A DNA stretch of 64,000 nt, taken from IMG/VR virus record IMGVR_UViG_3300008259_005066, positions 145,519 to 209,518 of that record; one strand, 5' to 3'. The translations under genes were made by a program, and so were the position numbers. The notes beneath the pieces are model-generated. The model was not told where the DNA came from, did not search any database, and saw only the letters and a program-made list of their open reading frames with translations. Of this stretch, positions 3,305 to 54,282 are shown piece after piece (position 1 is the stretch's first letter; each line of letters begins with the position of its first letter).

Positions 3305-4927
3305 TTATGTTATTTCTTGCCATTCCACACTGGCATAGACGTCTTGATTGGTGCCGGTGGTGGCCATGGTAATCACATACTCGTATGGTGTGCCAGTAAA
3401 AGGCTCTCGCTCCAGCTGATATTCAAAAGTAAATGTTTCTTGCGTGGGAGAACCTGTGCTCTGGTTGGTTGAGTTTATGAATGACTGTTCAGCGATGTCG
3501 CCTGACACCAAGGCTGTGGGAGCGAGGTTGTATTGCACTGAACTGTCTACAGCTGAATCCGTCCATGAGCCACCTGATGTGATGGCTTTTTTATAGATTC
3601 GGAACTGGAATATGCTGGCAGCCACAGGTACCAGGCTGTAGTTTATGGGTATAACCACGGCATTGAGATTGGTGCTCTTGAGTCGGATAGCGATAACGGG
3701 TTTAAAAGTCTGATCATTGGGCAAGCGAACCGGAGTGCCTATGGCATGACTGGCGGCTCTGGGATTGCCTGATCCACTCAGTTGGAATCCACCTTCAGAG
3801 ATCACTGTGCTACAGATCTGTGTCATCATGCTGGTGCCGGCGACAGCGCCAGTGTTGGTTATTTCATAGCGTATGGGCAAGGTGGCCGTGGTCATGTAGA
3901 CCTTGGTGTTGCCCGGTTGATTGGCATGAGGAAATGAATGACAGATAATATACGCACCGTTGATGACAAAGCCCACACGCACTGAGCCCACGCCCAGCCA
4001 CTCCACATCAGCAAAAAAGATCTGTGTTCGATCAGGATACAGCGTGATACCAGACGGATTGGTCACAGGTCCTGTGCCATTGAGTTGATCGACATTCCAG
4101 GCATCTTGTCTGATACGCTCTTCCACTCCAGTGGATCCTGAACGTATGACCATGTAGTTGTAGGATCCATCGTTTTCAAAATACACACCGTCGTTGGCAT
4201 CAAACAAGCCCACACGCTGGCGGAGATTTGTCTTTGGTGTGTTAAAACAAAATGTGTTCAGTGTGAGTTGGCTCTTGCCAGGCTGGTAAGGAAATGGCTT
4301 CAGCGTTTCTCTCAGCACTGAATCGCCCGACGCTGTGCCCACGTTGAGCTGATAGGAACTCTGAGCGGCTACATATACCACGTTGCCAGTGCCAGATATG
4401 GAGTTAGCAAACTGGCCATGATCGTAGTAGCGAGCCTGAGTTTCAAACAGGCTAACAGGTTCAGACACACGCAGACGCCCAAACGCATCGGCAGTGGCTC
4501 CGCCAAACCCAGATATCACTACATTGGCGTCATCAGCCAGCACCACATTGGCCGTGCCAGTGATGCCCACATTGCCATCTATGGTTATGCTTCCACCACC
4601 ATCAACCACAGTGACGTTGGCAGTGATACCCGCGATGTTTCCGGTTATGCCCACATTGCCCGACGTTATAGCGACATTGGTGTTGCCTGAGATCACCCAA
4701 GGTGTGGTGCCCTGGAAAACAGTGACATTGCCCGATATGGGCATGGTGTTGCCTGTGAGATCGATATTACCCAGTGCGCCAATGCTTATATTGCCCACTG
4801 ACACATTGCCAACTAGCACAGCGTTGGTGCGGACAAATACGTTGCCGGTGGCCTCGTCCAGCTCCAGGGCCTGCGTTATGTTACGTAGATACCACGGTGC
4901 TACGTTAGCTGGATTTGGATAGGCCAT
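3305..4927 (-). CDS. Putative virion structural protein (540 aa), Gly/Asn/Val-rich N-terminal repeats
   Basis: Long ORF; TAAATA late promoter at 4935-4940; GNV/GNI repeats like those of the fibre genes. Confidence 0.65.
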   Translation of the reverse strand: MAYPNPANVAPWYLRNITQALELDEATGNVFVRTNAVLVGNVSVGNISIGALGNIDLTGNTMPISGNVTVFQGTTPWVISGNTNVAITSGNVGITGNIAGITANVTVVDGGGSITIDGNVGITGTANVVLADDANVVISGFGGATADAFGRLRVSEPVSLFETQARYYDHGQFANSISGTGNVVYVAAQSSYQLNVGTASGDSVLRETLKPFPYQPGKSQLTLNTFCFNTPKTNLRQRVGLFDANDGVYFENDGSYNYMVIRSGSTGVEERIRQDAWNVDQLNGTGPVTNPSGITLYPDRTQIFFADVEWLGVGSVRVGFVINGAYIICHSFPHANQPGNTKVYMTTATLPIRYEITNTGAVAGTSMMTQICSTVISEGGFQLSGSGNPRAASHAIGTPVRLPNDQTFKPVIAIRLKSTNLNAVVIPINYSLVPVAASIFQFRIYKKAITSGGSWTDSAVDSSVQYNLAPTALVSGDIAEQSFINSTNQSTGSPTQETFTFEYQLEREPFTGTPYEYVITMATTGTNQDVYASVEWQEIT

Positions 4928-39236: not shown

Positions 39237-39869
39237 TTAGAATATTATGCTGAAAACAATGGCTTTGGATTTGCTTATCAACTCATCCTGATTGGCATCG
39301 TTGTTGAAGTATATGCCAGTGCCTCCGCTACCAGGCACATCGGATGTTATTGTGGCCGCATTGCCAATGGCAGTGGGAGTGGCGCCGTTGTATTCCAGCA
39401 CCAAAGTTCCATCTAGTGTGAGTTCGCTGGTGGCATAATCAAATGTCAGACCGGCATTGCCACCAAATGTGCCATCTCCGTTGTTGAACTGCACCGCTGT
39501 GTTTGAACCACCCGGAACTACTGTGTTACCTGTGGCGATAGGAGTCCATGATCCTGTCAAGCCCGTGGTGTCTGTGGACGAGGTCAGTTCCCATTGTGCT
39601 GTGTTGTTGTTGTATCGCAGGCCTGCAAAGTTTGAAGCAGTGCGATGCGTGAGCAAACCAGAATTTGATGCGTAGCTTCCTGTGTTGGACGAGTTGACCA
39701 GGATGAACGGATCTTTGACATTGAGTTCGTCCACATTGATATAGGTCAAATTACCTTGCACCGTCAAGTTTCCACTCACAGTGGTATCCGTGTCGATATA
39801 GACCTTCTGCGTGGGAGGATCAATGGTCTGGATGTAGTAATCGCCGTCGATGCGTTTGTAACTGGTCAT
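39237..39869 (-). CDS. Virion protein sharing the VQGNLTYINVDELNVKDP fibre module
   Basis: Same module as in the three large fibres; PGGSNTAVQFNNG repeat. Confidence 0.7.
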   Translation of the reverse strand: MTSYKRIDGDYYIQTIDPPTQKVYIDTDTTVSGNLTVQGNLTYINVDELNVKDPFILVNSSNTGSYASNSGLLTHRTASNFAGLRYNNNTAQWELTSSTDTTGLTGSWTPIATGNTVVPGGSNTAVQFNNGDGTFGGNAGLTFDYATSELTLDGTLVLEYNGATPTAIGNAATITSDVPGSGGTGIYFNNDANQDELISKSKAIVFSIIF

Positions 39870-40453
39870 ATCTGCCCTTTTGCTGTATTTAGCAGGGTTT
39901 GGAATTCCAAAATTGGCATGCTACGCAGATTTTTCACTGTGTCAAAACCGGCCACTCGAGCGGATTGCAGGCCTTCTACCCGTATGAATTCTCTGGCAGG
40001 AAAATCCCCACAGATCTGTATGATCTGTTTGACCCAATTGCCGCTGAATGTGGGCGGATCCTGGCTTTTTTTGTAGAACTGCGTGTCAGCATAGAGATTG
40101 TTGAACTGCCCATTGGTGGTTCCAAGATCAAATCCCAGCAGGTAAATGCAGTGATATCCATCAAGACAAGCCAAGGCCACTGCATTGGGACCGGAACTGA
40201 ATCCTTGATATTTGCTGTCCAATCTGTGCGCACCGCTTTCAGGCAAGGGTTTGCGGGTGTAGAAACGATGCTTCTTGGCATAGCCCGAATCTTGTATGGC
40301 CGTGGCGATGGGACGGTCAGTGGCTATCAGCACATCAGGTGTGAACGTGCGATACAAGGCATTGCATCCATACACTGGCCCTTGTGTTTTCAATTGTGCA
40401 AGATCGATGGGTTCGCGGCTGCGGCCGTTGCCCAAAACAAATGCTGTGGTCAT
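39866..40453 (-). CDS. Maf/DUF115- or GT29-like nucleotide-sugar-binding protein
   Basis: AFVLGNGRSR, VYGCNALYR, DVLIATD, SSGPNAV, IYLLGFDL, NNLYADT motifs. Confidence 0.55.
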   Translation of the reverse strand: MTTAFVLGNGRSREPIDLAQLKTQGPVYGCNALYRTFTPDVLIATDRPIATAIQDSGYAKKHRFYTRKPLPESGAHRLDSKYQGFSSGPNAVALACLDGYHCIYLLGFDLGTTNGQFNNLYADTQFYKKSQDPPTFSGNWVKQIIQICGDFPAREFIRVEGLQSARVAGFDTVKNLRSMPILEFQTLLNTAKGQI

Positions 40454-40488
40454 AAAAAATCCTCCCTGTATGTATCTGGGGAGGATTT
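40454..40488 (-). terminator. Intrinsic terminator after the 253-aa structural gene
   Basis: AAATCCTCCC...GGGAGGATTT 10-bp stem followed by T-tract on the minus strand. Confidence 0.7.
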
Positions 40489-40504
40489 CCGAGCCTTAGG
40501 TATT

Positions 40505-41266
40505 TTAGCTGTTGTAGTTTTCTACGATGCCAAGATCCAAAAGATTCTGCTGTGTGCCTGTGTTACCAGATCCGGTTGTGCCCGATTTGATAACTGTGCC
40601 TTCGTCTGTAAAGAAGTTGGCAGCATAACGCACATCATTGACCACGCTGGTGGCAGCATAGGTAGATCCACCTGTGAAGTCCAAGATGAACTTGTTGGTC
40701 AACTTGCTGATACGGCGTGCTGTAGAGTCATTCAATGTGAACGTGATGTTCATATTGCCCGAAGTCAATGTTGTATCGGCTTCGTCGGCTAAGATGCAAA
40801 CACCAACTGCGTTTACTCGACCTGTGCCGGTGCTACCAAGTGCGGCTGTAGCAGTAAAGATTTGACCCACTGTGGGTGTGCCAGTTACTCCGTAAGCAGT
40901 CCAATTGGTGTCGCCAACAACAGTGATGCGATACGCTGTGCCTGATACCAATGCTGTGCGAGCGGTCGTGCCACCAACCAAGAACTTGTGTGCGCCTTTT
41001 TGTGTGATGATGTAACCATCTTCTTCAGCAAAACCTGTGATACGCACACGGCATTTCACAGTGGGATAGTTTGCTGAATCCACTGTGTTGGATCCACCAA
41101 CCACACCTTCATATTCAGTGGCCGAACCAGGTGTGAAACCTGTGGGTACCACGGGTGCTGTCAGTGCTGAAAAAGGATTGAAGCCGATGTCAACTCCGGG
41201 ATTAGCGCCGGTTGAAGAGTTATAACTCGTTTCCGAGATGTTTTTGATTTTGAGAGGACGTCCCAT
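40505..41266 (-). CDS. Probable abundant virion protein (253 aa)
   Basis: Own late promoter, strong TAAGGAG RBS and own terminator; Gly/Thr-rich. Confidence 0.7.
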   Translation of the reverse strand: MGRPLKIKNISETSYNSSTGANPGVDIGFNPFSALTAPVVPTGFTPGSATEYEGVVGGSNTVDSANYPTVKCRVRITGFAEEDGYIITQKGAHKFLVGGTTARTALVSGTAYRITVVGDTNWTAYGVTGTPTVGQIFTATAALGSTGTGRVNAVGVCILADEADTTLTSGNMNITFTLNDSTARRISKLTNKFILDFTGGSTYAATSVVNDVRYAANFFTDEGTVIKSGTTGSGNTGTQQNLLDLGIVENYNS

Positions 41267-41359
41267 TTTGTTTTCTCCTTAAAGAAGCCCAATGCGGGTT
41301 CTAGCCGCTACGCAGGGGGTTGATGCCTGCATAAAACGCTGAATTGCGTTGTGTAAGAG
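41267..41359 (-). promoter_or_regulatory. Structured 5' leader (three tandem hairpins), candidate cis-regulatory RNA
   Basis: AACGC/GCGTT, TATGCAGG/CCTGCGTA and GCGG/CCGC stems lie back-to-back between TAAATA (41360-41365) and the RBS. Confidence 0.55.
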
Positions 41360-41362
41360 TAT

Positions 41363-42433
41363 TTATGATCTTTCGCCATTAAGCAGGGCTACCACCGGTG
41401 CCAGGATCTGTTGTTCCACATTGCCTGAATGGAACCAATGGAAATTGTGTTCAATATGGAAACGATTGGCATGCCACCAATCTCGTGTGTCTGCGTGATG
41501 CTGATTGACCACTTCGGCCACGAGATGCAACCTACTGCTGAAATTCTGTTTGAGATCATAGTCATCACAGAAAGTATGGAATCCCAGTCGTTTCAACCAT
41601 GCAGTGGTTCCAGGCGCACCCACCACAAGGAATAGTTGTCCGGCAGCGATGGGTTTCCAGATCTTTTCGCTAGTAAAACTGATCAAGGCCGATGTCTCTG
41701 TGACCACATTGCACCATGCATCTTGATAGGCTGGATGCGCCAAAGAATGGTCGTTTTGTCCTAAGGTTTCGCCTTGCCATGCCATGGGAAAATCTCGTAT
41801 GTTTGTGATGCATCGTTGTGCCAGTTCATCGCCTATGAGATTGGCCAATCCACGATATTGGTATGCAGTGATTGGATGCCCCTGATAGGGACAGCGATCA
41901 TAGAAACTGTAGATAAACTTGTCCAGCAGTCCAAGATCTTTGACCATGGTATAGAACACCAAACGATGGAACGTGGGATTGCGATTGAGACAGGAGAACG
42001 CATGTGTTCTATCATGACTGGGGAACTCGCGACACAGCGATTGTTTTTTAAAAACAAACAACCAACTGGGATATGTAATCTCTCGGAGATGTTGATGCTG
42101 TGTGAGATCAAACTGGCTCAAACCAAAAAAACAAGGTATACGGAATTCACCAGCGATGTTATCCAGTATGATAGACTTGTCTCGATAGTCTGTGACAGGA
42201 TCTTGCGTGCCGTCAAATATGATCTGTTCAAATCTGATGTTATCGGCGCTGGCCCGATCAACCACGGTCTTTACGTAATGTTCTATGTCTTGACCTTTGA
42301 CTAAATTGCAGTCAATGACCAGGGTTGGACGATGGACCTGTTTCAACAACGGTTCATAGTGCTGGTGAGGATTGTTTTCAACAAAATCAAACTGATCAGT
42401 GTTGAAGTTGTAGCGCCAATGCAGATCTTGCAT
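41363..42433 (-). CDS. Glycosyltransferase-like protein (356 aa)
   Basis: FSCLNR...HR, CNVVTET, FTSEKIWKPI, FLVVG, LKRLGF.TF..YD; the SEK..KP segment recalls GT10-type C-terminal motifs. Family is inferred. Confidence 0.45.
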   Translation of the reverse strand: MQDLHWRYNFNTDQFDFVENNPHQHYEPLLKQVHRPTLVIDCNLVKGQDIEHYVKTVVDRASADNIRFEQIIFDGTQDPVTDYRDKSIILDNIAGEFRIPCFFGLSQFDLTQHQHLREITYPSWLFVFKKQSLCREFPSHDRTHAFSCLNRNPTFHRLVFYTMVKDLGLLDKFIYSFYDRCPYQGHPITAYQYRGLANLIGDELAQRCITNIRDFPMAWQGETLGQNDHSLAHPAYQDAWCNVVTETSALISFTSEKIWKPIAAGQLFLVVGAPGTTAWLKRLGFHTFCDDYDLKQNFSSRLHLVAEVVNQHHADTRDWWHANRFHIEHNFHWFHSGNVEQQILAPVVALLNGERS

Positions 42434-42441
42434 CGCAATAC

Positions 42442-42579
42442 TTATGGTGTTTTTACTATCAGACTATGATTGGCTGGTGGGGGCAAAGGTTTGATCACAA
42501 CATAACCAATAGCAACACCTATGGGTGCTTGTGGTCGGATGGCCGGTGTGCCCAACCCAATGTTTACTTTGCCAATCAT
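42442..42579 (-). CDS. Small Pro-rich ORF (45 aa)
   Basis: MIGKVNIGLG...IVKTP; ATG 5 nt after a perfect TATAAATA (42585-42592); fills the gap between the gp23 terminator and the next gene. Confidence 0.5.
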   Translation of the reverse strand: MIGKVNIGLGTPAIRPQAPIGVAIGYVVIKPLPPPANHSLIVKTP

Positions 42580-42598
42580 GACAATATTTATAGCCAAC

Positions 42599-42623
42599 AA
42601 AAAACCCGCCGAAGCGGGTTTTT
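42599..42623 (-). terminator. Intrinsic terminator after the major capsid gene
   Basis: Minus strand AAAAACCCGC-TTCG-GCGGGTTTTT (UUCG tetraloop). Confidence 0.9.
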
Positions 42624-42646
42624 GTTTTTTCCTTTTCCGTAACGGA

Positions 42647-43843
42647 TTAGGAGAATGACAAGTTGGAAACAGCAATCTCACCAACATAGTCGCCGGCGTT
42701 ACCGAACGAAGATGCTGTGTTTGTGAGTTCGATATAGCCGTAACGTGTCATGAATGATACGACTGGTTCGAATGTGCTTGGATCCAGCACGACACCGCTT
42801 GACATCAATGGGATGTATGGGCAGTAGAACGCGGCTGCATCTGTTTCGCTTGCGCCTTTGTAACCAACCAACACAGGTGTTGTATCTGCGGCATAAGAGT
42901 CGCAGAACACACGCATAGCGCCGTTCAATGTACCAACAAACTTGGTGTTTGTGGGTGCTTCGAATGTGCCTTCTGTGGTGCGGGCAAAAGCTGATGTTGT
43001 TGCAGACTGAAGAACAGTCAATGAAGCAGGCGATACAACAGCCCAGTTACCAGCGCCACGGCGTGTGCGCTGAGCGATCAAGTTAGCAACACGGTTGATC
43101 AAAACTGCCAATGCGGCATGTTCGTCACCAACGAATGTGGCTGTGCCTGATACAGTAGCCTGGTTGTATGTAAACTCTGTTGATGCAAGAGTGCGGAGTG
43201 ACAGGAGGATCTCCTGATCAATTTCAGCGGTAATTTCTTGCGCTAGAGCTGCCATGATTTCTGCTTCGATGTCAATGCCATGCATGGCTTGTGCATCTTG
43301 TGCAGCTTCAAATGTCCAACGTGCTTGCAATTTGCGTGTTTTAGCTTCAACAGCCTGCTTCAGGATTTGCACAGAAATTTGCTTACCACCGTTGCCTTCG
43401 AGGGTAGCAGTAGCGGCACCAGTATAAGTGGTGGCTGTACCTTCGTTTTGTGGCACTGTGGAGTAAGCCTGAGCGATCTTGAATGGGCTGAGTGCTTCTT
43501 CACCTGCTGTAACGGATGTCTGAGCAGCTGAATTGTCAGTCAATGACTGAGCATAACGCACACGCAGAGTGTGGATCTGGCCTACAGGACCTGTCATTGG
43601 CTGAACACCAACCAACTCGTTAGCGATAACAGTTGGCATGACACGTCGGATAACTGGCAGAATCACACGGTTTAATGTAGCGATGTTACCAGATACTGTG
43701 GAACCAGCACTTGCGTTCTCTTTCAAATACTTGCGGGTGTTTTCGAGGATCACACCCATTGTGTTGCGGCGAGCACCATTCAAACCTTCCATGAGGGCTT
43801 CTTTGGTCTCGTCCCAACGGCTTTCTAATAGTTCTTGTGACAT
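42647..43843 (-). CDS. gp23: Major capsid protein (gp23-like)
   Basis: LIRRVMP-like VIRRVMPTVIANELVGVQPMTGPVGQI, AKTRKLQARWTFEAAQD..AMHGID.EAE, EIDQEI, FYCPYIPL, FMTRYG. Confidence 0.97.
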   Translation of the reverse strand: MSQELLESRWDETKEALMEGLNGARRNTMGVILENTRKYLKENASAGSTVSGNIATLNRVILPVIRRVMPTVIANELVGVQPMTGPVGQIHTLRVRYAQSLTDNSAAQTSVTAGEEALSPFKIAQAYSTVPQNEGTATTYTGAATATLEGNGGKQISVQILKQAVEAKTRKLQARWTFEAAQDAQAMHGIDIEAEIMAALAQEITAEIDQEILLSLRTLASTEFTYNQATVSGTATFVGDEHAALAVLINRVANLIAQRTRRGAGNWAVVSPASLTVLQSATTSAFARTTEGTFEAPTNTKFVGTLNGAMRVFCDSYAADTTPVLVGYKGASETDAAAFYCPYIPLMSSGVVLDPSTFEPVVSFMTRYGYIELTNTASSFGNAGDYVGEIAVSNLSFS

Positions 43844-46599: not shown

Positions 46600-46818
46600 C
46601 TACAGGGCCGGAGCGGCCGGAGGCTGATATTGCTTGCGGATATCTCGGAGTTTTTCTTTGTATTCGTATGACCGCACATCGTTCATGCGACGCAGTTTGT
46701 TGATCTGCTTGAGCGTGAGTTTGGTCTTGCGCAGTTTGCCCAACTGAGGTTGGCTGTTGTCATCAGCAAGATCTTGGTAACCAGCAGGATCTTTGTGGAA
46801 AAATTCAAAGAGGTTCAT
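46600..46818 (-). CDS. Small basic prohead core protein (gp68-position)
   Basis: 72 aa, KTKLTLKQINKLRRM; ATG 5 nt after TAAATA (46824-46829). Confidence 0.6.
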   Translation of the reverse strand: MNLFEFFHKDPAGYQDLADDNSQPQLGKLRKTKLTLKQINKLRRMNDVRSYEYKEKLRDIRKQYQPPAAPAL

Positions 46819-46829
46819 GGCAGTATTTA

Positions 46830-48611
46830 TTAGATAGTGGGCACAGGAGCGGCACCACCGGCAGGTCCTGCGCCAGCTGCGGCAGCGCCAGGAGCACCGG
46901 CCATGCCTGGAGCCATGGGTGCCACAGCACCTTCGGGTGCACCTGCGGCACCTGCGATCTCTTCACCAGCTGTGATGTCTGCTTCGATATCAGCAGGGCT
47001 GATGCCTACTGAACGCAGATCTTGACCACCTTGCGTGCTCAGTTCGGGTTGATCTCGCTCTTCTTTCCATAGTTTTTCGTTGTCTGCAATCTCTTCTTCA
47101 GACAGTCCAAGATAGCGTTTCATCAGGAATCTCTTGCTCAAATAGGGCAACTGTTCTAGCCCGCTGAACGCTGTCATCCGTGTGGTGTCCAGTTCAGCCT
47201 GGCGATAACTGGCAAAATTCTGTGGCGGTGCAAACTTGATATTGAACAGGCCAGAGTCAATGTTGAAACCTCTCCAGCGCAGGAACATCTTGAACTCGTC
47301 ATCCAGTTTCTGCACGATCTGACGTTGCATACGCTCGCAGTATTGATTGAAACGATATTCCTGTATCAGCGCAGTGCCCACACGCCCGTCATTCATAGGG
47401 CGATCAGAATCATCTGGCCCAGTGGGTAGATATGATGACGGCACACGCAGACCGCGGCACATCTTGTTGTTGAAATATTTTAAGTCGTCGATCTCGCCTA
47501 GATTCTGTCCGCCTTGCAGGGTAGTAACATCCGAGCCACGACCTTCGGCTGTGACCGGAAAGAAGTAGTCTTCGTTGATTGACAGCGGATTGTATGTGGT
47601 ATCCATGATATTTTCACGACCACCTGTATTAGACGGAATACGTCGCTGATGGATTTCATTTTTCACACGTTCCACGAACTGCATGGCCAAATGGCTGGGC
47701 ATGTTGCCCACATCAATTTTGAATATCCTGCGTTCTGGCGCACGAGATATGCGATAGATCAGGATAGCATCTTCCAGCAATTCTTTTTGCTTGAATACCT
47801 TGAATATCATCTCCAGCACTGACTGTCCAAATGGCCAATAGTAGTCCAAACCTTCGCTCAGGCTGAGATGCACCACGTGCTTGGCATCGATGCAGGTTTC
47901 GTTCACAGAACGCTGGAATCGACTCTGTCCTGACGAGTTAGGAGCATTGGGTGCTGTGTAGTTGTAGGGTGCTGAATACCCACCCGATGGTGGCTGTGTG
48001 TTGTAGTCATTGATGGTCTTGGCCGCCACTGACATGGATTGGAAATTGGGATTGATGTCTCGGATCACATACTGTTCAGGACGCTTGCCTTCGCTTTCGT
48101 TCACGATCACACGGGCCACTTTGGTCATATCCACCCAGTAGAGTTCAAAGGTTTCAGGATCACGCACAAACACTTGATCGCCATACTTCAGAGTATTGCG
48201 GAACATCTTGAACATGCGATTGTCAAACTTGTTGAGTTTGGTCCATTGCTGGAGCTGTTTCTTGATGATGTCTACTTCGTGCTCAGTGGGTGTTTCTGTG
48301 AAACCTATTTCAAAAGGTGTGTCGTTGGCCTCACAGGTCTGTGTGGAAAATTCGGCTAGGATGTCAAGGCAGGCATTGATTTCCGAATCGCCATCCATGT
48401 TCTCGTATTGATTGTAGCGTTCCATCCTGTTGGGATGGCCAGTGTAGACCTCTGGCAGTCTGCTGGCATAGTTGCGGAAGGCAAATTCCGCATGGGCTTT
48501 GTCGTCTACACCGTAGCCTGTGCCATAACTGGGACCGCGTGGAACCTGCCCCGAAATTGGGCTGAACTGTCCTGAAACATCAGCGACTTTAAAATATTTT
48601 TTCCATGACAT
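46830..48611 (-). CDS. gp20: Portal protein (gp20-like)
   Basis: LEDAILIYRISRAPERRIFKIDVGNMP..A.Q, EDYFFP..EGRGSDVTTL.GGQNLGEIDD..YF..K..R.L.VP.S. Start set at MSWKKYF (48611), 7 nt after TAAATA. Confidence 0.95.
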   Translation of the reverse strand: MSWKKYFKVADVSGQFSPISGQVPRGPSYGTGYGVDDKAHAEFAFRNYASRLPEVYTGHPNRMERYNQYENMDGDSEINACLDILAEFSTQTCEANDTPFEIGFTETPTEHEVDIIKKQLQQWTKLNKFDNRMFKMFRNTLKYGDQVFVRDPETFELYWVDMTKVARVIVNESEGKRPEQYVIRDINPNFQSMSVAAKTINDYNTQPPSGGYSAPYNYTAPNAPNSSGQSRFQRSVNETCIDAKHVVHLSLSEGLDYYWPFGQSVLEMIFKVFKQKELLEDAILIYRISRAPERRIFKIDVGNMPSHLAMQFVERVKNEIHQRRIPSNTGGRENIMDTTYNPLSINEDYFFPVTAEGRGSDVTTLQGGQNLGEIDDLKYFNNKMCRGLRVPSSYLPTGPDDSDRPMNDGRVGTALIQEYRFNQYCERMQRQIVQKLDDEFKMFLRWRGFNIDSGLFNIKFAPPQNFASYRQAELDTTRMTAFSGLEQLPYLSKRFLMKRYLGLSEEEIADNEKLWKEERDQPELSTQGGQDLRSVGISPADIEADITAGEEIAGAAGAPEGAVAPMAPGMAGAPGAAAAGAGPAGGAAPVPTI

Positions 48612-53391: not shown

Positions 53392-53830
53392 CATCCAATT
53401 GAGACTTGCTACGCAAGTCTATTCATTCGCTGTCGCTCATGAATTGATTACATAATCGAGCGAAGCGAGATAACAGTTATCATCCAGATTGTTTGGTCAC
53501 ACTTTGCCCGCCCAGGGCAAAGAGGTGTCATCATCCGAGTCGACTCAGTCACACAGCGTTAGAGCATTACAGAGGCGGTTGTCCGATACCTCGAGCTCCG
53601 TCTTTATTACAACGGCGGCCAACACGACATACGCTATCATATCATGCTGACGTGTGCTATCACTAGCACGTCTTTTTCCCTTTATATTCTATTCAAACAA
53701 TCAAACCGCAGGTGTTTGCGATCGTGGTCCTGTCAAGGATACTGATTGAGTGCTCACTAGCGCGGTGAGTCTTCCATCCCTGTGATCCTGGATCCAGGTC
53801 TAGGGCACACGACATTGGCCTGTGCTAGCC
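53392..53830 (-). ncRNA. Large hairpin-dense non-coding element (candidate structured ncRNA; strand inferred)
   Basis: ~430 nt with no ORF of 60 aa or more in an otherwise gene-dense genome; at least 10 stems or palindromes (see findings). Confidence 0.55.
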
Positions 53831-54265
53831 TTGACTGCTTAGTTTGCCTTTGATGTGACTGCCATGCACACGGACCTGTATGTGTCCGTTGTAATAGTCA
53901 TCACTTTCTAATACACGTCGGGAGAATTGTTCGCGAGCCTCTATGTAACTGCATTCCGATTTGGATTGGCAGTAATACAGTATTTCACGTGAGAAGTTTT
54001 CGGTGCCTAGCAGTTCAACATCTCGAGATAACTCCGGAGAACTGCCATAATATGTCTGCCAATCTGAATCTATCGCGCCTCTGATTTTTTTGCGTTTCTT
54101 TTTGCCATTTTTGAGTTTGACTACTCGATATGTTGTTTTCTTGAACTTTGCTAATTTTTTGCCAATATACTGCCGGCCGGTAAGTTTATTGGTGATCAAA
54201 TAAACAAACCCGACACACGTTTCGGGTAACTCTGTGATTTCTCGGGATTCGAAAAGCCATGACAT
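53825..54265 (-). CDS. Stand-alone GIY-YIG nuclease-family protein
   Basis: GFVYLITNKLTGRQYIGKK, YYGSS, FSREIL, E..EQF...VL..DDYYNG. Confidence 0.85.
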   Translation of the reverse strand: MSWLFESREITELPETCVGFVYLITNKLTGRQYIGKKLAKFKKTTYRVVKLKNGKKKRKKIRGAIDSDWQTYYGSSPELSRDVELLGTENFSREILYYCQSKSECSYIEAREQFSRRVLESDDYYNGHIQVRVHGSHIKGKLSSQG

Positions 54266-54282
54266 GAGCACATAATTATCAA

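What the first reader, a model, noticed from the sequence alone, without database searches (positions are those of the whole stretch)
41267..41365. Compact three-hairpin leader RNA on a monocistronic structural gene: riboswitch-like candidate
Seen (minus strand): TAAATA, then AACGC-AAUUCA-GCGUU, UAUGCAGG-CAUCAACCC-CCUGCGUA and GCGG-CUAGAAC-CCGC with almost no spacers, then AUUGGGCUUCUUUAAGGAG and the ATG. Most late genes here have leaders under 25 nt, so a ~90-nt folded leader stands out. The gene has its own terminator. Inference: loop AACCC could pair with GGG(C)UU, or loop AGAA with UUCU, next to the RBS, giving a translational switch or autoregulatory protein-binding site.
Basis: partly seen in the sequence, partly recalled or inferred. 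Interest (0 to 1): 0.6.

Follow-up and report, generated by a model that had tools for sequence, protein, structure and literature searches.

The report
Known freshwater-2 leader RNA in a jumbo phage
The three-hairpin leader is real and conserved, but it is an instance of the already catalogued 'freshwater-2' RNA motif (Rfam RF02980); here it sits between a T4-type late promoter and a gene of unknown function next to the capsid gene of a freshwater jumbo phage, and the proposed switch pairings are not supported.

Summary
On the minus strand, 41365-41267 holds TAAATA, three abutting hairpins, an open AAGGAG ribosome site and the ATG of a 253-aa gene that has its own terminator.

Rfam matches it over its full length to RF02980 'freshwater-2' (Cis-reg): 69.4 bits against a cut-off of 49.9. 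So the motif is already known.

Across 52 distinct homologous leaders the three stems are 97.6% paired, and 11 pairs change on both sides. Hairpin 3 covaries at all four pairs while its loop CUAGAAC stays nearly invariant.

TAAATA is this phage's T4-like late-promoter box: 50 of 90 copies end 5-40 nt before a gene start. The transcript should therefore begin about 4 nt before hairpin 1.

The motif occurs once per genome, in phages whose gp23-type capsid protein is nearest PA5oct-like phages. It always precedes a protein starting MGR(P/A/S) or MAR(S/L), usually just after the capsid gene.

Loop-2 CCC with GGG pairs in only 73% of cells, with an uncompensated G-to-A in 33 of 52 leaders. AGAA with UUCU is invariant and broken in two variants. 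The ribosome-site region folds no better than shuffled sequence.

Best reading: a constitutive structured 5' module that stabilises a heavily translated late mRNA. A protein-binding operator is the main rival, because the loops are frozen.

The parts
41360..41367 (-). CATAAATA: T4-type late-promoter -10 box (7 of 8 matches to TATAAATA). Its TAA (41365-41363) doubles as the stop codon of the upstream 356-aa ORF.
   Evidence: Read. TAAATA is nearly invariant at fixed spacing in 51 of 52 homologous leaders. 50 of 90 genomic TAAATA copies end 5-40 nt before a gene start, where 2.3% of positions qualify; the reverse complement does so in 2 of 90. The box persists where the upstream gene is divergent. 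ATAAATA was predicted as the late promoter in the jumbo phages CBB and GAP32 (PMC5259590).
41354..41354 (-). Predicted transcription start (+/- 2 nt), the 6th nt after TAAATA. This gives a leader of about 88 nt.
   Evidence: Inference from T4 late-promoter geometry (from memory of the T4 literature); not measured. Five metatranscriptome contigs cover the leader and none continues into the upstream gene, but these are contigs only, so the support is weak.
41335..41350 (-). Hairpin 1 (AACGC / AAUUCA / GCGUU). This is the variable stem of the motif.
   Evidence: Three of its 5 pairs change on both sides and 99.2% of cells pair. In the wider family it is enlarged in some leaders and absent in a few, with a TAAATA-to-hairpin-2 distance of 15-52 nt and a mode of 23.
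41309..41333 (-). Hairpin 2 (UAUGCAGG / CAUCAACCC / CCUGCGUA). The base UAUGC/GCGUA is invariant, including a U.G pair. The upper stem covaries and the loop keeps ACC(C).
   Evidence: Pair 6 is seen as GC, AU and UA. The U.G pair is present in 52 of 52 leaders, which fits an RNA of this strand. ACC occurs in 72 of 87 loops.
41294..41308 (-). Hairpin 3 (GCGG / CUAGAAC / CCGC). It abuts hairpin 2 with no linker.
   Evidence: All 4 pairs covary and 100% of cells pair. Among 87 distinct modules there are 22 arm combinations, 84 of them fully paired, and the loop is CUAGAAC in 79.
41267..41293 (-). Open translation-initiation region: AUUGGGCUUCUUU, SD AAGGAG (41280-41275), then the A-rich spacer AAAACAAA.
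   Evidence: It is no more structured than shuffled sequence (z +0.32, centroid unpaired). It forms the 3' part of the Rfam model.
40505..41266 (-). 253-aa ORF (p253), starting MGRPLKIK. All-beta, no known family. Probably a capsid-associated late protein.
   Evidence: More than 2340 homologues by word search and 300 clusters at 50% identity. No Pfam, PHROG or PDB match. AF2 gives pLDDT 87.9 with no fold match above noise. It lies 1-2 genes after the gp23-type capsid gene in all relatives.
40454..40489 (-). Intrinsic terminator of the p253 transcript: an 11-bp stem with a GC-rich core AUCCUCCC/GGGAGGAU, then U6. Its 3' arm holds the SD of the next gene, whose ATG is at 40453.
   Evidence: MFE -18.1, z -3.2, 0 of 200 shuffles. 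Conserved with compensatory changes in 20 of 20 relatives examined.
39866..40453 (-). 195-aa ORF (p195). It follows the leader-bearing gene in every L002-L081 relative and in 4 of the remote-protein loci. Weak sub-threshold CST-I / MptE-like similarity.
42647..43843 (-). gp23-type major capsid protein, which anchors the conserved gene neighbourhood.
   Evidence: PF07068 5.6e-99 and phrog_138 3e-101. 63-67% identical to PA5oct, Phosso, Vibrio 2.275.O and fHe-Yen9-04.

Best explanation
The element is a member of the known freshwater-2 RNA family (RF02980). It is the roughly 88-nt 5' leader of a mostly monocistronic late mRNA in a freshwater jumbo phage whose capsid protein is nearest PA5oct-like phages.

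Proposed course of events:
1. Transcription starts at a T4-type late promoter (CATAAATA) about 4 nt before hairpin 1.
2. It ends at a conserved intrinsic terminator right after the 253-aa gene.
3. The three abutting hairpins form a stable structured module at the extreme 5' end.
4. The following 27 nt stay unpaired: a U-rich tract, AAGGAG and an A-rich spacer.

Most likely the module acts constitutively in cis. It would protect the 5' end of a very abundant late message from 5'-end-dependent decay and keep the ribosome site open. The protein, probably a capsid accessory protein made in capsid-like amounts, would then be produced at a high level.

It is not a metabolite switch and not an SD-occluding switch.

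Shown: family membership, structure and covariation, promoter-box enrichment, terminator, one copy per genome, linkage to the gene next to the capsid gene.
Inferred: the exact start site, the stabilising effect and the role of the protein.
For: - Full-length RF02980 match at 69.4 bits against a cut-off of 49.9.
- Relatives whose protein is only 42-44% identical score 71-76 bits.
- Stems are 97.6% paired, 11 pairs change on both sides, and the covariation score is 0.267 against 0.085 shuffled and 0.02-0.045 slid.
- 87 distinct hairpin-2/3 modules show 22 hairpin-3 arm combinations.
- The invariant U.G pair fits an RNA of this strand.
- The TAAATA box is position- and strand-specific before genes. 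It abuts the motif in 89 of 93 instances, including where the upstream gene is divergent.
- The hairpin module is stable (z -2.65) while the ribosome-site region is open (z +0.32).
- The terminator is conserved.
- There is one copy per genome, including complete genomes of 337 and 364 kb.
- The gene keeps a fixed position after the capsid gene.
- The late promoter ATAAATA was predicted in jumbo phages CBB and GAP32.
Against: - No 5' end has been mapped. The metatranscriptome data are contigs only.
- A plain stabiliser would not need frozen loops. Yet CUAGAAC, ACC(C) and the UAUGC/GCGUA junction are invariant across proteins that have diverged beyond BLAST recognition. That points to sequence-specific recognition by some factor.
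- Hairpin 1, the supposed 5'-terminal protector, is missing in a few members.
- In the full ensemble fold the SD is paired with a median probability of 0.5.
- Codons 3-4 are frozen at synonymous sites: CGT in 56 of 56 and CCT in 54 of 56. This is unexplained.
Confidence: 0.55

Rival explanations
1. Protein-binding operator. Hairpins 2 and 3, stacked, with the CUAGAAC and ACC(C) loops, are the recognition site of a protein that sets translation or decay of this mRNA. The most economical candidate is the encoded MGRP-family protein itself, giving feedback from the unassembled pool as with T4 gp32 or the P22 scaffolding protein. Another phage or host factor is also possible.
For: - Loops and the helix junction are invariant while the stems covary.
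- The only gene always linked to the motif is the downstream one. Its basic N-terminus MGR(P/A/S)/MAR(S/L) is kept even when the rest of the protein is unrecognisable, and Arg3 is kept through both CGU and AGA codons.
- The model contains small SH3/Tudor/KOW-like barrels, but only weakly (Z up to 3.8).
- JGI names some homologues as a predicted RNA-binding protein, YcfA/HicA-like.
Against: - Pfam finds no HicA match, or any other, even at E = 10.
- The fold matches are at noise level.
- No RegA-type regulator was found in four genomes, though that search also found nothing in its control genomes and so does not show absence.
- No RNA-protein test is possible with these tools.
- A conserved N-terminus is equally expected for a virion-attachment domain.
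Confidence: 0.27
2. One reading: a riboswitch-like translational switch in which loop 2 (AACCC) or loop 3 (AGAA) pairs with GGG(C)UU or UUCU next to the SD, with or without a ligand.
For: - The complementary segments exist in the window.
- CUUC can pair with GGAG, and that pairing is present in nearly all leaders, though it never varies.
- The ensemble SD-paired probability is 0.7 in the window.
Against: - CCC with GGG pairs in only 73% of cells and has an uncompensated change in 33 of 52 leaders.
- AGAA with UUCU shows no covariation and is broken in two variants.
- The GGRCUUCU segment is absent from true members L105 and L160.
- The ribosome-site region is no more structured than shuffled sequence.
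- There is no multi-helix junction, and there are no metabolic or transport genes downstream.
Confidence: 0.04
3. Put-like processive antitermination RNA. The nascent hairpins would modify RNA polymerase so that part of the transcripts read through the conserved terminator into the next gene p195, which has no TAAATA box of its own.
For: - The hairpins lie immediately after the promoter.
- In the window and the 20 relatives examined, p195 starts right after the terminator U-tract with its SD inside the terminator stem, so it depends on read-through.
Against: - The wider family often lacks p195 downstream.
- Rfam reports no match to any antitermination family.
- Ordinary partial read-through explains p195 expression.
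Confidence: 0.05
4. No function of its own: the conservation would be hitch-hiking with the promoter and the gene start, and the hairpins incidental.
For: The whole-leader MFE is unremarkable (z -0.98).
Against: - Compensatory changes occur in all three stems.
- The motif persists where the proteins are only 42-44% identical or unrecognisable.
- The flanking upstream genes are not conserved.
Confidence: 0.02

Closest known systems
freshwater-2 RNA motif (Rfam RF02980, type Cis-reg; from memory, one of the candidate RNAs of Weinberg et al. 2017, NAR 45:10811)
   Same: Full-length match above the curated cut-off. The three hairpins, the UAUGC/GCGUA base, the CUAGAAC loop and the SD/AUG at the 3' end are the same. 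The samples holding it are labelled freshwater metagenome.
   Different: Nothing in the element itself differs. What this work adds is context, which I could not find in the papers held here:
- it lies in jumbo phages with a gp23-type capsid protein;
- it is abutted by a T4-type late-promoter box;
- there is one copy per genome;
- it always precedes an MGRP-family gene by the capsid gene;
- hairpin 1 is variable.
5'-terminal stabiliser leaders of abundant-protein mRNAs (E. coli ompA 5' UTR; phage T7 gene 10 leader with 5' stem-loop, U-rich enhancer and strong SD). Named from memory.
   Same: Works alike, by inference: stem-loops at or within a few nt of the 5' end, followed by an open U/A-rich strong ribosome site on a capsid-associated or otherwise abundant protein gene.
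   Different: There is no sequence or family relationship. Those leaders do not need invariant loops. The stabilising effect has not been measured here.
Autogenous translational operators of phage proteins (T4 gp32 and gp43, MS2 coat-protein hairpin, P22 scaffolding protein feedback). Named from memory.
   Same: A small hairpin element with sequence-specific loops in the leader of a phage gene, and a protein made in large amounts.
   Different: No RNA binding has been shown for the 253-aa protein. The operator does not overlap the SD or AUG. There is no homology to those proteins.
T4 late promoter TATAAATA, and the ATAAATA late motif of jumbo phages CBB and GAP32 (PMC5259590)
   Same: CATAAATA directly upstream, and the same box sits before many genes of this genome at short distance.
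   Different: The gp55/gp33 homologues of this phage were not searched for. The start site is not mapped.

Membership tests
Rfam RF02980 freshwater-2 | Covariance-model score at or above the curated gathering score, over the full model | tested here: met
   69.4 bits against 49.9, model positions 1-84 of 84, window 41351-41264 (-)
Rfam RF02980 freshwater-2 | Three consecutive hairpins supported by compensatory changes | tested here: met
   97.6% of cells paired, 11 pairs with changes on both sides, 0 of 500 shuffles reach the observed score, slid controls 0.02-0.045 against 0.267; 87 distinct modules
Rfam RF02980 freshwater-2 | Conserved UAUGC/GCGUA helix base and CUAGAAC loop | tested here: met
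   Present in the window; invariant or nearly invariant columns; CUAGAAC in 79 of 87 modules
Rfam RF02980 freshwater-2 | Lies directly upstream of an ORF, with the SD and AUG inside the 3' end of the model | tested here: met
   AAGGAG at 41280-41275 and ATG at 41266; the same in all relatives
Metabolite riboswitch | Expression platform with a conserved, mutually exclusive alternative pairing that covers the SD or a terminator | tested here: not met
   Proposed pairings unsupported; CUUC/GGAG never varies, so it is uninformative; ribosome-site region z +0.32
Metabolite riboswitch | Association with genes of one metabolic or transport pathway | tested here: not met
   The downstream genes are late phage proteins with no family, next to the capsid gene
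Metabolite riboswitch | Direct ligand binding by the RNA | not testable with these tools
   Needs in-line probing or ITC
T4-type late promoter | TATAAATA-like box, orientation-specific and enriched just upstream of late genes | tested here: met
   CATAAATA at 41367-41360; 50 of 90 TAAATA copies end 5-40 nt before a start, against 2 of 90 for the reverse complement
T4-type late promoter | Phage encodes a gp55-like late sigma factor and co-activators | not tested
   Reported for the jumbo phage CBB; not searched in this roughly 60% complete record
T4-type late promoter | Mapped transcript 5' end about 6-7 nt downstream of the box | tested here: inconclusive
   Only metatranscriptome contigs were available. 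Five cover the leader and none extends upstream
Autogenous translational operator | The encoded protein binds its own leader RNA | not testable with these tools
   No RNA-binding family detected; fold matches at noise level

The most novel reading that the evidence does not exclude
The freshwater-2 core (stacked hairpins 2 and 3, with the CUAGAAC and ACC(C) loops) is an operator read by the protein it precedes. In this reading, the conserved basic N-terminus MGRPLK of a capsid-accessory protein family binds its own leader. Unassembled protein would then throttle its own synthesis, tying production to capsid assembly across a large clade of uncultured freshwater jumbo phages.
Probability: 0.2. 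Interest if true: 0.6.

Novelty: already known. Interest (0 to 1): 0.3.

Why it matters
The motif is a catalogued orphan. From memory, it has a structure but no organism and no function attached.

This window and its relatives supply the missing biological frame:
- It is the leader of the gene that follows the gp23-type capsid gene in jumbo phages.
- It appears to be driven by a T4-type late promoter.
- It occurs once per genome.
- It is tied to a protein family with a conserved MGRP N-terminus.

That turns 'unknown cis-regulator from lake metagenomes' into a few bench-testable alternatives: stabiliser, autogenous operator or antiterminator. For the scan itself, the result is that the finding is a rediscovery, not a new class.

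Tried and rejected
- **Loop-2/GGG pseudoknot and loop-3/UUCU pairing:** counted on 52 leaders and rejected or uninformative.
- **CUUC/GGAG anti-SD hairpin:** never varies, so it says nothing either way.
- **Fourth helix GGRC:GUCC around the SD and AUG:** suggested by frozen synonymous sites. It is not more stable than shuffled sequence, and it is not kept in members that use AGA for Arg3.
- **Terminator of the upstream gene:** rejected. The upstream gene is variable or divergent, and hairpin 1 lies after the promoter box.
- **DNA-level element:** unlikely, because the invariant U.G pair fits an RNA of this strand.
- **Identity of the 253-aa protein:** nothing from PHROG, Pfam or a PDB profile, or from the Atlas feature search. 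The first AF2 model was poor. The second was good (pLDDT 87.9) but had no match in Foldseek PDB, only uncharacterised proteins in BFVD, VIA-align Z up to 3.8, and atlas TM up to 0.41.
- **GenBank phages:** no DNA or protein match for the leader or gene. PA5oct has no such gene after its capsid gene.
- **RegA family PF01818:** no hit in four genomes, but the search also found nothing in its control genomes, so absence is not shown.
- **Literature:** no held paper names the motif. The main text of the presumed source paper does not mention it, and its supplements are not held.
- **Metatranscriptomes:** only assembled contigs, with small shares of the stretch. They cannot give a start site or an expression level.

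Full report
**1. The observation**

- CATAAATA, whose TAA is the stop codon of the upstream 356-aa ORF 41363-42433.
- Hairpin 1: AACGC/AAUUCA/GCGUU, 41350-41335.
- One U as linker.
- Hairpin 2: UAUGCAGG/CAUCAACCC/CCUGCGUA, 41333-41309.
- No linker.
- Hairpin 3: GCGG/CUAGAAC/CCGC, 41308-41294.
- Then AUUGGGCUUCUUUAAGGAGAAAACAAA and the ATG of a 253-aa ORF, 40505-41266.

RNAfold gives these three hairpins as the MFE and centroid structure. The 61-nt hairpin module is more stable than shuffled sequence (-18.9 kcal/mol, z -2.65, 2 of 200). The following SD/AUG stretch is not (z +0.32, centroid unpaired). The whole 111 nt is therefore unremarkable (z -0.98).

The gene does have its own terminator: an 11-bp stem plus U6 at 40489-40454, z -3.2.

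**2. What it is**

Rfam's covariance models match window 41351-41264 (-) over the full length of RF02980 'freshwater-2 RNA', type Cis-reg. The score is 69.4 bits against a gathering score of 49.9. The element is therefore already catalogued.

From memory, the family comes from the Weinberg et al. 2017 set of candidate RNAs, known only from aquatic metagenomes with downstream genes of unknown function. I could not check that text. The paper's main text does not name the motif, its supplements are not held, and no held paper mentions the family.

**3. Genomic frame**

The window is the last 64 kb of a 209.5-kb IMG/VR virus record, estimated about 60% complete. The capsid protein at 42647-43843 is of the gp23 type (PF07068, 5.6e-99). 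It is 63-67% identical to those of jumbo phages PA5oct, Phosso, Vibrio 2.275.O and fHe-Yen9-04.

The 253-aa protein has more than 2340 homologues by word search and 300 clusters at 50% identity. All come from uncultured phages or metagenomes. None is in GenBank phages, and PA5oct lacks the gene.

In 80 IMG/VR loci the order is: capsid gene, then 1.3-2.2 kb of variable genes, then leader, p253, p195. The 356-aa upstream gene of the window is present only in close kin.

RF02980 occurs exactly once in this record and in five relatives. These include two complete genomes of 337 and 364 kb with terminal repeats.

**4. Comparative structure**

Every one of the 78 loci examined for upstream sequence carries the same leader, though six are cut off by a contig end. 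An alignment of 52 distinct leaders (A2) was scored against the three-hairpin structure, plus a candidate fourth CUUC/GGAG helix.

| Measure | Observed | Control |
|---|---|---|
| Cells paired | 97.6% | 86.8% shuffled |
| Pairs changed on both sides | 11 | 7.2 shuffled |
| Covariation score | 0.267 | 0.085 shuffled; 0.02-0.045 slid |

- Hairpin 3 covaries at 4 of 4 pairs with 100% pairing.
- Hairpin 1 covaries at 3 of 5 pairs.
- Hairpin 2 keeps an invariant base UAUGC/GCGUA, including a U.G pair in 52 of 52 leaders. This fits an RNA of this strand. Its upper stem covaries.

A pattern scan of IMG/VR, followed by parsing, gave 87 distinct hairpin-2/3 modules. They show 22 different hairpin-3 arm combinations, 84 of 87 fully paired. 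Loop CUAGAAC occurs in 79 and ACC in loop 2 in 72.

Homologues only 42-44% identical in protein still score 71-76 bits.

**5. The promoter**

TAAATA is nearly invariant at a fixed distance from hairpin 1. In this genome, 50 of the 90 TAAATA copies end 5-40 nt upstream of a gene start on the same strand. Only 2.3% of positions qualify, and the reverse complement does so in 2 of 90. Most TAAATA-to-ATG distances are 5-31 nt, and this gene's is 93 nt.

The motif equals the T4 late promoter core. ATAAATA was predicted as the late promoter before structural genes in the jumbo phages CBB and GAP32, which also have a gp55-like sigma factor (PMC5259590).

In L083 and L085 the upstream gene is divergent, yet TAAATA plus the leader are retained. 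So the leader is a 5' UTR with its own promoter, not a 3' element of the upstream gene.

With T4 geometry (from memory, the start lies about 6 nt after the box), the transcript begins near 41354. That is 4 nt before hairpin 1 here, and 0-1 nt before it in most relatives. This is an inference.

Freshwater metatranscriptome contigs cover the leader in two runs, and none continues upstream. Contigs cannot define ends, so the support is weak.

**6. The wider family**

Of the 93 full-motif instances parsed, 36 precede proteins of 117-453 aa that are only remotely similar to p253 by BLASTP, or not at all. Even so, 89 of 93 begin MGR(P/A/S) and 4 begin MAR(S/L). Arg3 is kept through both CGU and AGA codons.

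Most of these genes sit directly after a capsid gene 72-92% identical to the window's. 89 of 93 have TAAATA 15-52 nt before hairpin 2, with a mode of 23.

Hairpin 1 is therefore a variable stem, absent in a few and enlarged in others. Hairpins 2 and 3 are the core. None of these proteins has a Pfam family, and only one has a weak PHROG hit.

A conserved N-terminus with a variable remainder, the position next to the capsid gene, and a dedicated late promoter, strong SD and terminator together suggest an abundant capsid-accessory protein. This is an inference.

The AF2 model built on a 61-sequence alignment is confident (pLDDT 87.9, pTM 0.85) and all-beta. It has no significant structural neighbour. 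A module of about 50 aa (residues 100-150) recurs in proteins of 1000-4300 aa.

**7.

- Loop-2 CCC with GGG pairs in only 73% of cells, and G changes to A in 33 of 52 leaders without compensation.
- Loop-3 AGAA with UUCU is invariant on both sides and is broken by the two CUAAAAC variants.
- CUUC/GGAG never varies.
- The GGRCUUCU segment is missing in true members L105 and L160.
- The SD region is thermodynamically open, although ensemble folds of whole leaders give a median SD-paired probability of 0.5.

There is thus no comparative or energetic support for a switch, and nothing suggests a ligand.

**8. Most likely mechanism and rivals**

I put 0.55 on a constitutive 5' structured module that stabilises a heavily translated late mRNA and leaves the ribosome site open. 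This works like the ompA and T7 gene 10 leaders, which I name from memory.

The main rival (0.27) is a protein-binding operator, most simply autogenous. The reason is that the loops and the helix junction are frozen across very divergent proteins, which a generic stabiliser does not require. The JGI label 'HicA-like RNA-binding' on some homologues is not reproduced by Pfam.

A put-like antiterminator (0.05) is prompted by the dependence of the next gene on terminator read-through. The riboswitch or switch model gets 0.04. 'No function' gets 0.02 and is contradicted by the covariation.

**9. Verdict**

The element is already known as RF02980. The added value is its biological context.

Noticed in passing
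window 53695-53830 (-): A second catalogued orphan RNA: Polynucleobacter-1 RNA (RF01718), 113 bits against a cut-off of 37, full length. It lies at the start of a roughly 430-nt ORF-free stretch after ORF 53825-54271. There are no tRNA genes in the window.
   Followed up: partly
window 40454-40489 (-) and ATG at 40453: The terminator of the 253-aa gene carries the SD (GGAGGA) of the next gene in its 3' arm. U6 is followed at once by that gene's ATG. The arrangement is conserved with compensatory changes in 20 of 20 relatives examined. The next gene seems to depend on read-through and would be translated from a sequestered SD.
   Followed up: partly
window 39866-40453 (-); L083 1221-2366; L085 944-2101: The 195-aa neighbour follows the leader-bearing gene in every L002-L081 relative. 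It has weak, sub-threshold CST-I sialyltransferase and MptE-like matches. TPR / glycosyltransferase-9-like genes lie upstream in two distant relatives. This may be a glycosylation island around a Ser/Thr/Gly-rich protein.
   Followed up: no
L002 3501-3503 (IMGVR_UViG_3300008339_000010), also L183: A 99% identical relative has ATC where the window has the ATG start codon of the 253-aa gene. The leader is otherwise identical. This could be a sequencing error, a rare start codon or a knocked-out gene.
   Followed up: no
L199 and L202 (NZ_JBBAKG010000001.1 and ...003.1): The only true instances of the motif among 185,579 GTDB species genomes lie on two contigs (183 and 148 kb) of one MAG titled Haliscomenobacter sp. 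EUL_031. One contig carries a capsid gene 92% identical to the window's. This is either a host hint (Bacteroidota) or phage contigs mis-binned into the MAG.
   Followed up: partly
window 41255-41263 (-), codons 2-4 of the 253-aa gene: Synonymous sites are frozen: Arg3 is CGT in 56 of 56 and Pro4 is CCT in 54 of 56, while Leu5 and Ile7 vary freely. A GGRC:GUCC helix enclosing the SD and AUG would explain it. That helix is not more stable than chance and is not kept in the wider family.
   Followed up: partly
whole record G000 (e.g. window 46600-46818, 46830-48611, 3305-4927): About 16 genes have TAAATA only 5-8 nt before their ATG. With a start about 6 nt after the box, these would be leaderless late mRNAs. 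Alternatively the box is just the previous gene's stop codon, or the starts are miscalled.
   Followed up: no
window 42600-42623: A perfect 10-bp palindromic hairpin flanked by A5 and T5, AAAAACCCGC-CGAA-GCGGGTTTTT, lies about 20 nt after the capsid gene's stop. It looks like a bidirectional terminator. The 81-aa ORF 42442-42687 that overlaps it is probably spurious.
   Followed up: no
P0177, P0181, P0211, P0239 and others: A roughly 50-aa module of the 253-aa protein (residues about 100-150, YRITVVGDTxWxxxG...G.IFTAT) recurs 5-11 times in proteins of 1000-4300 aa. There is no Pfam family for it beyond a weak E1_FCCH hint.
   Followed up: no
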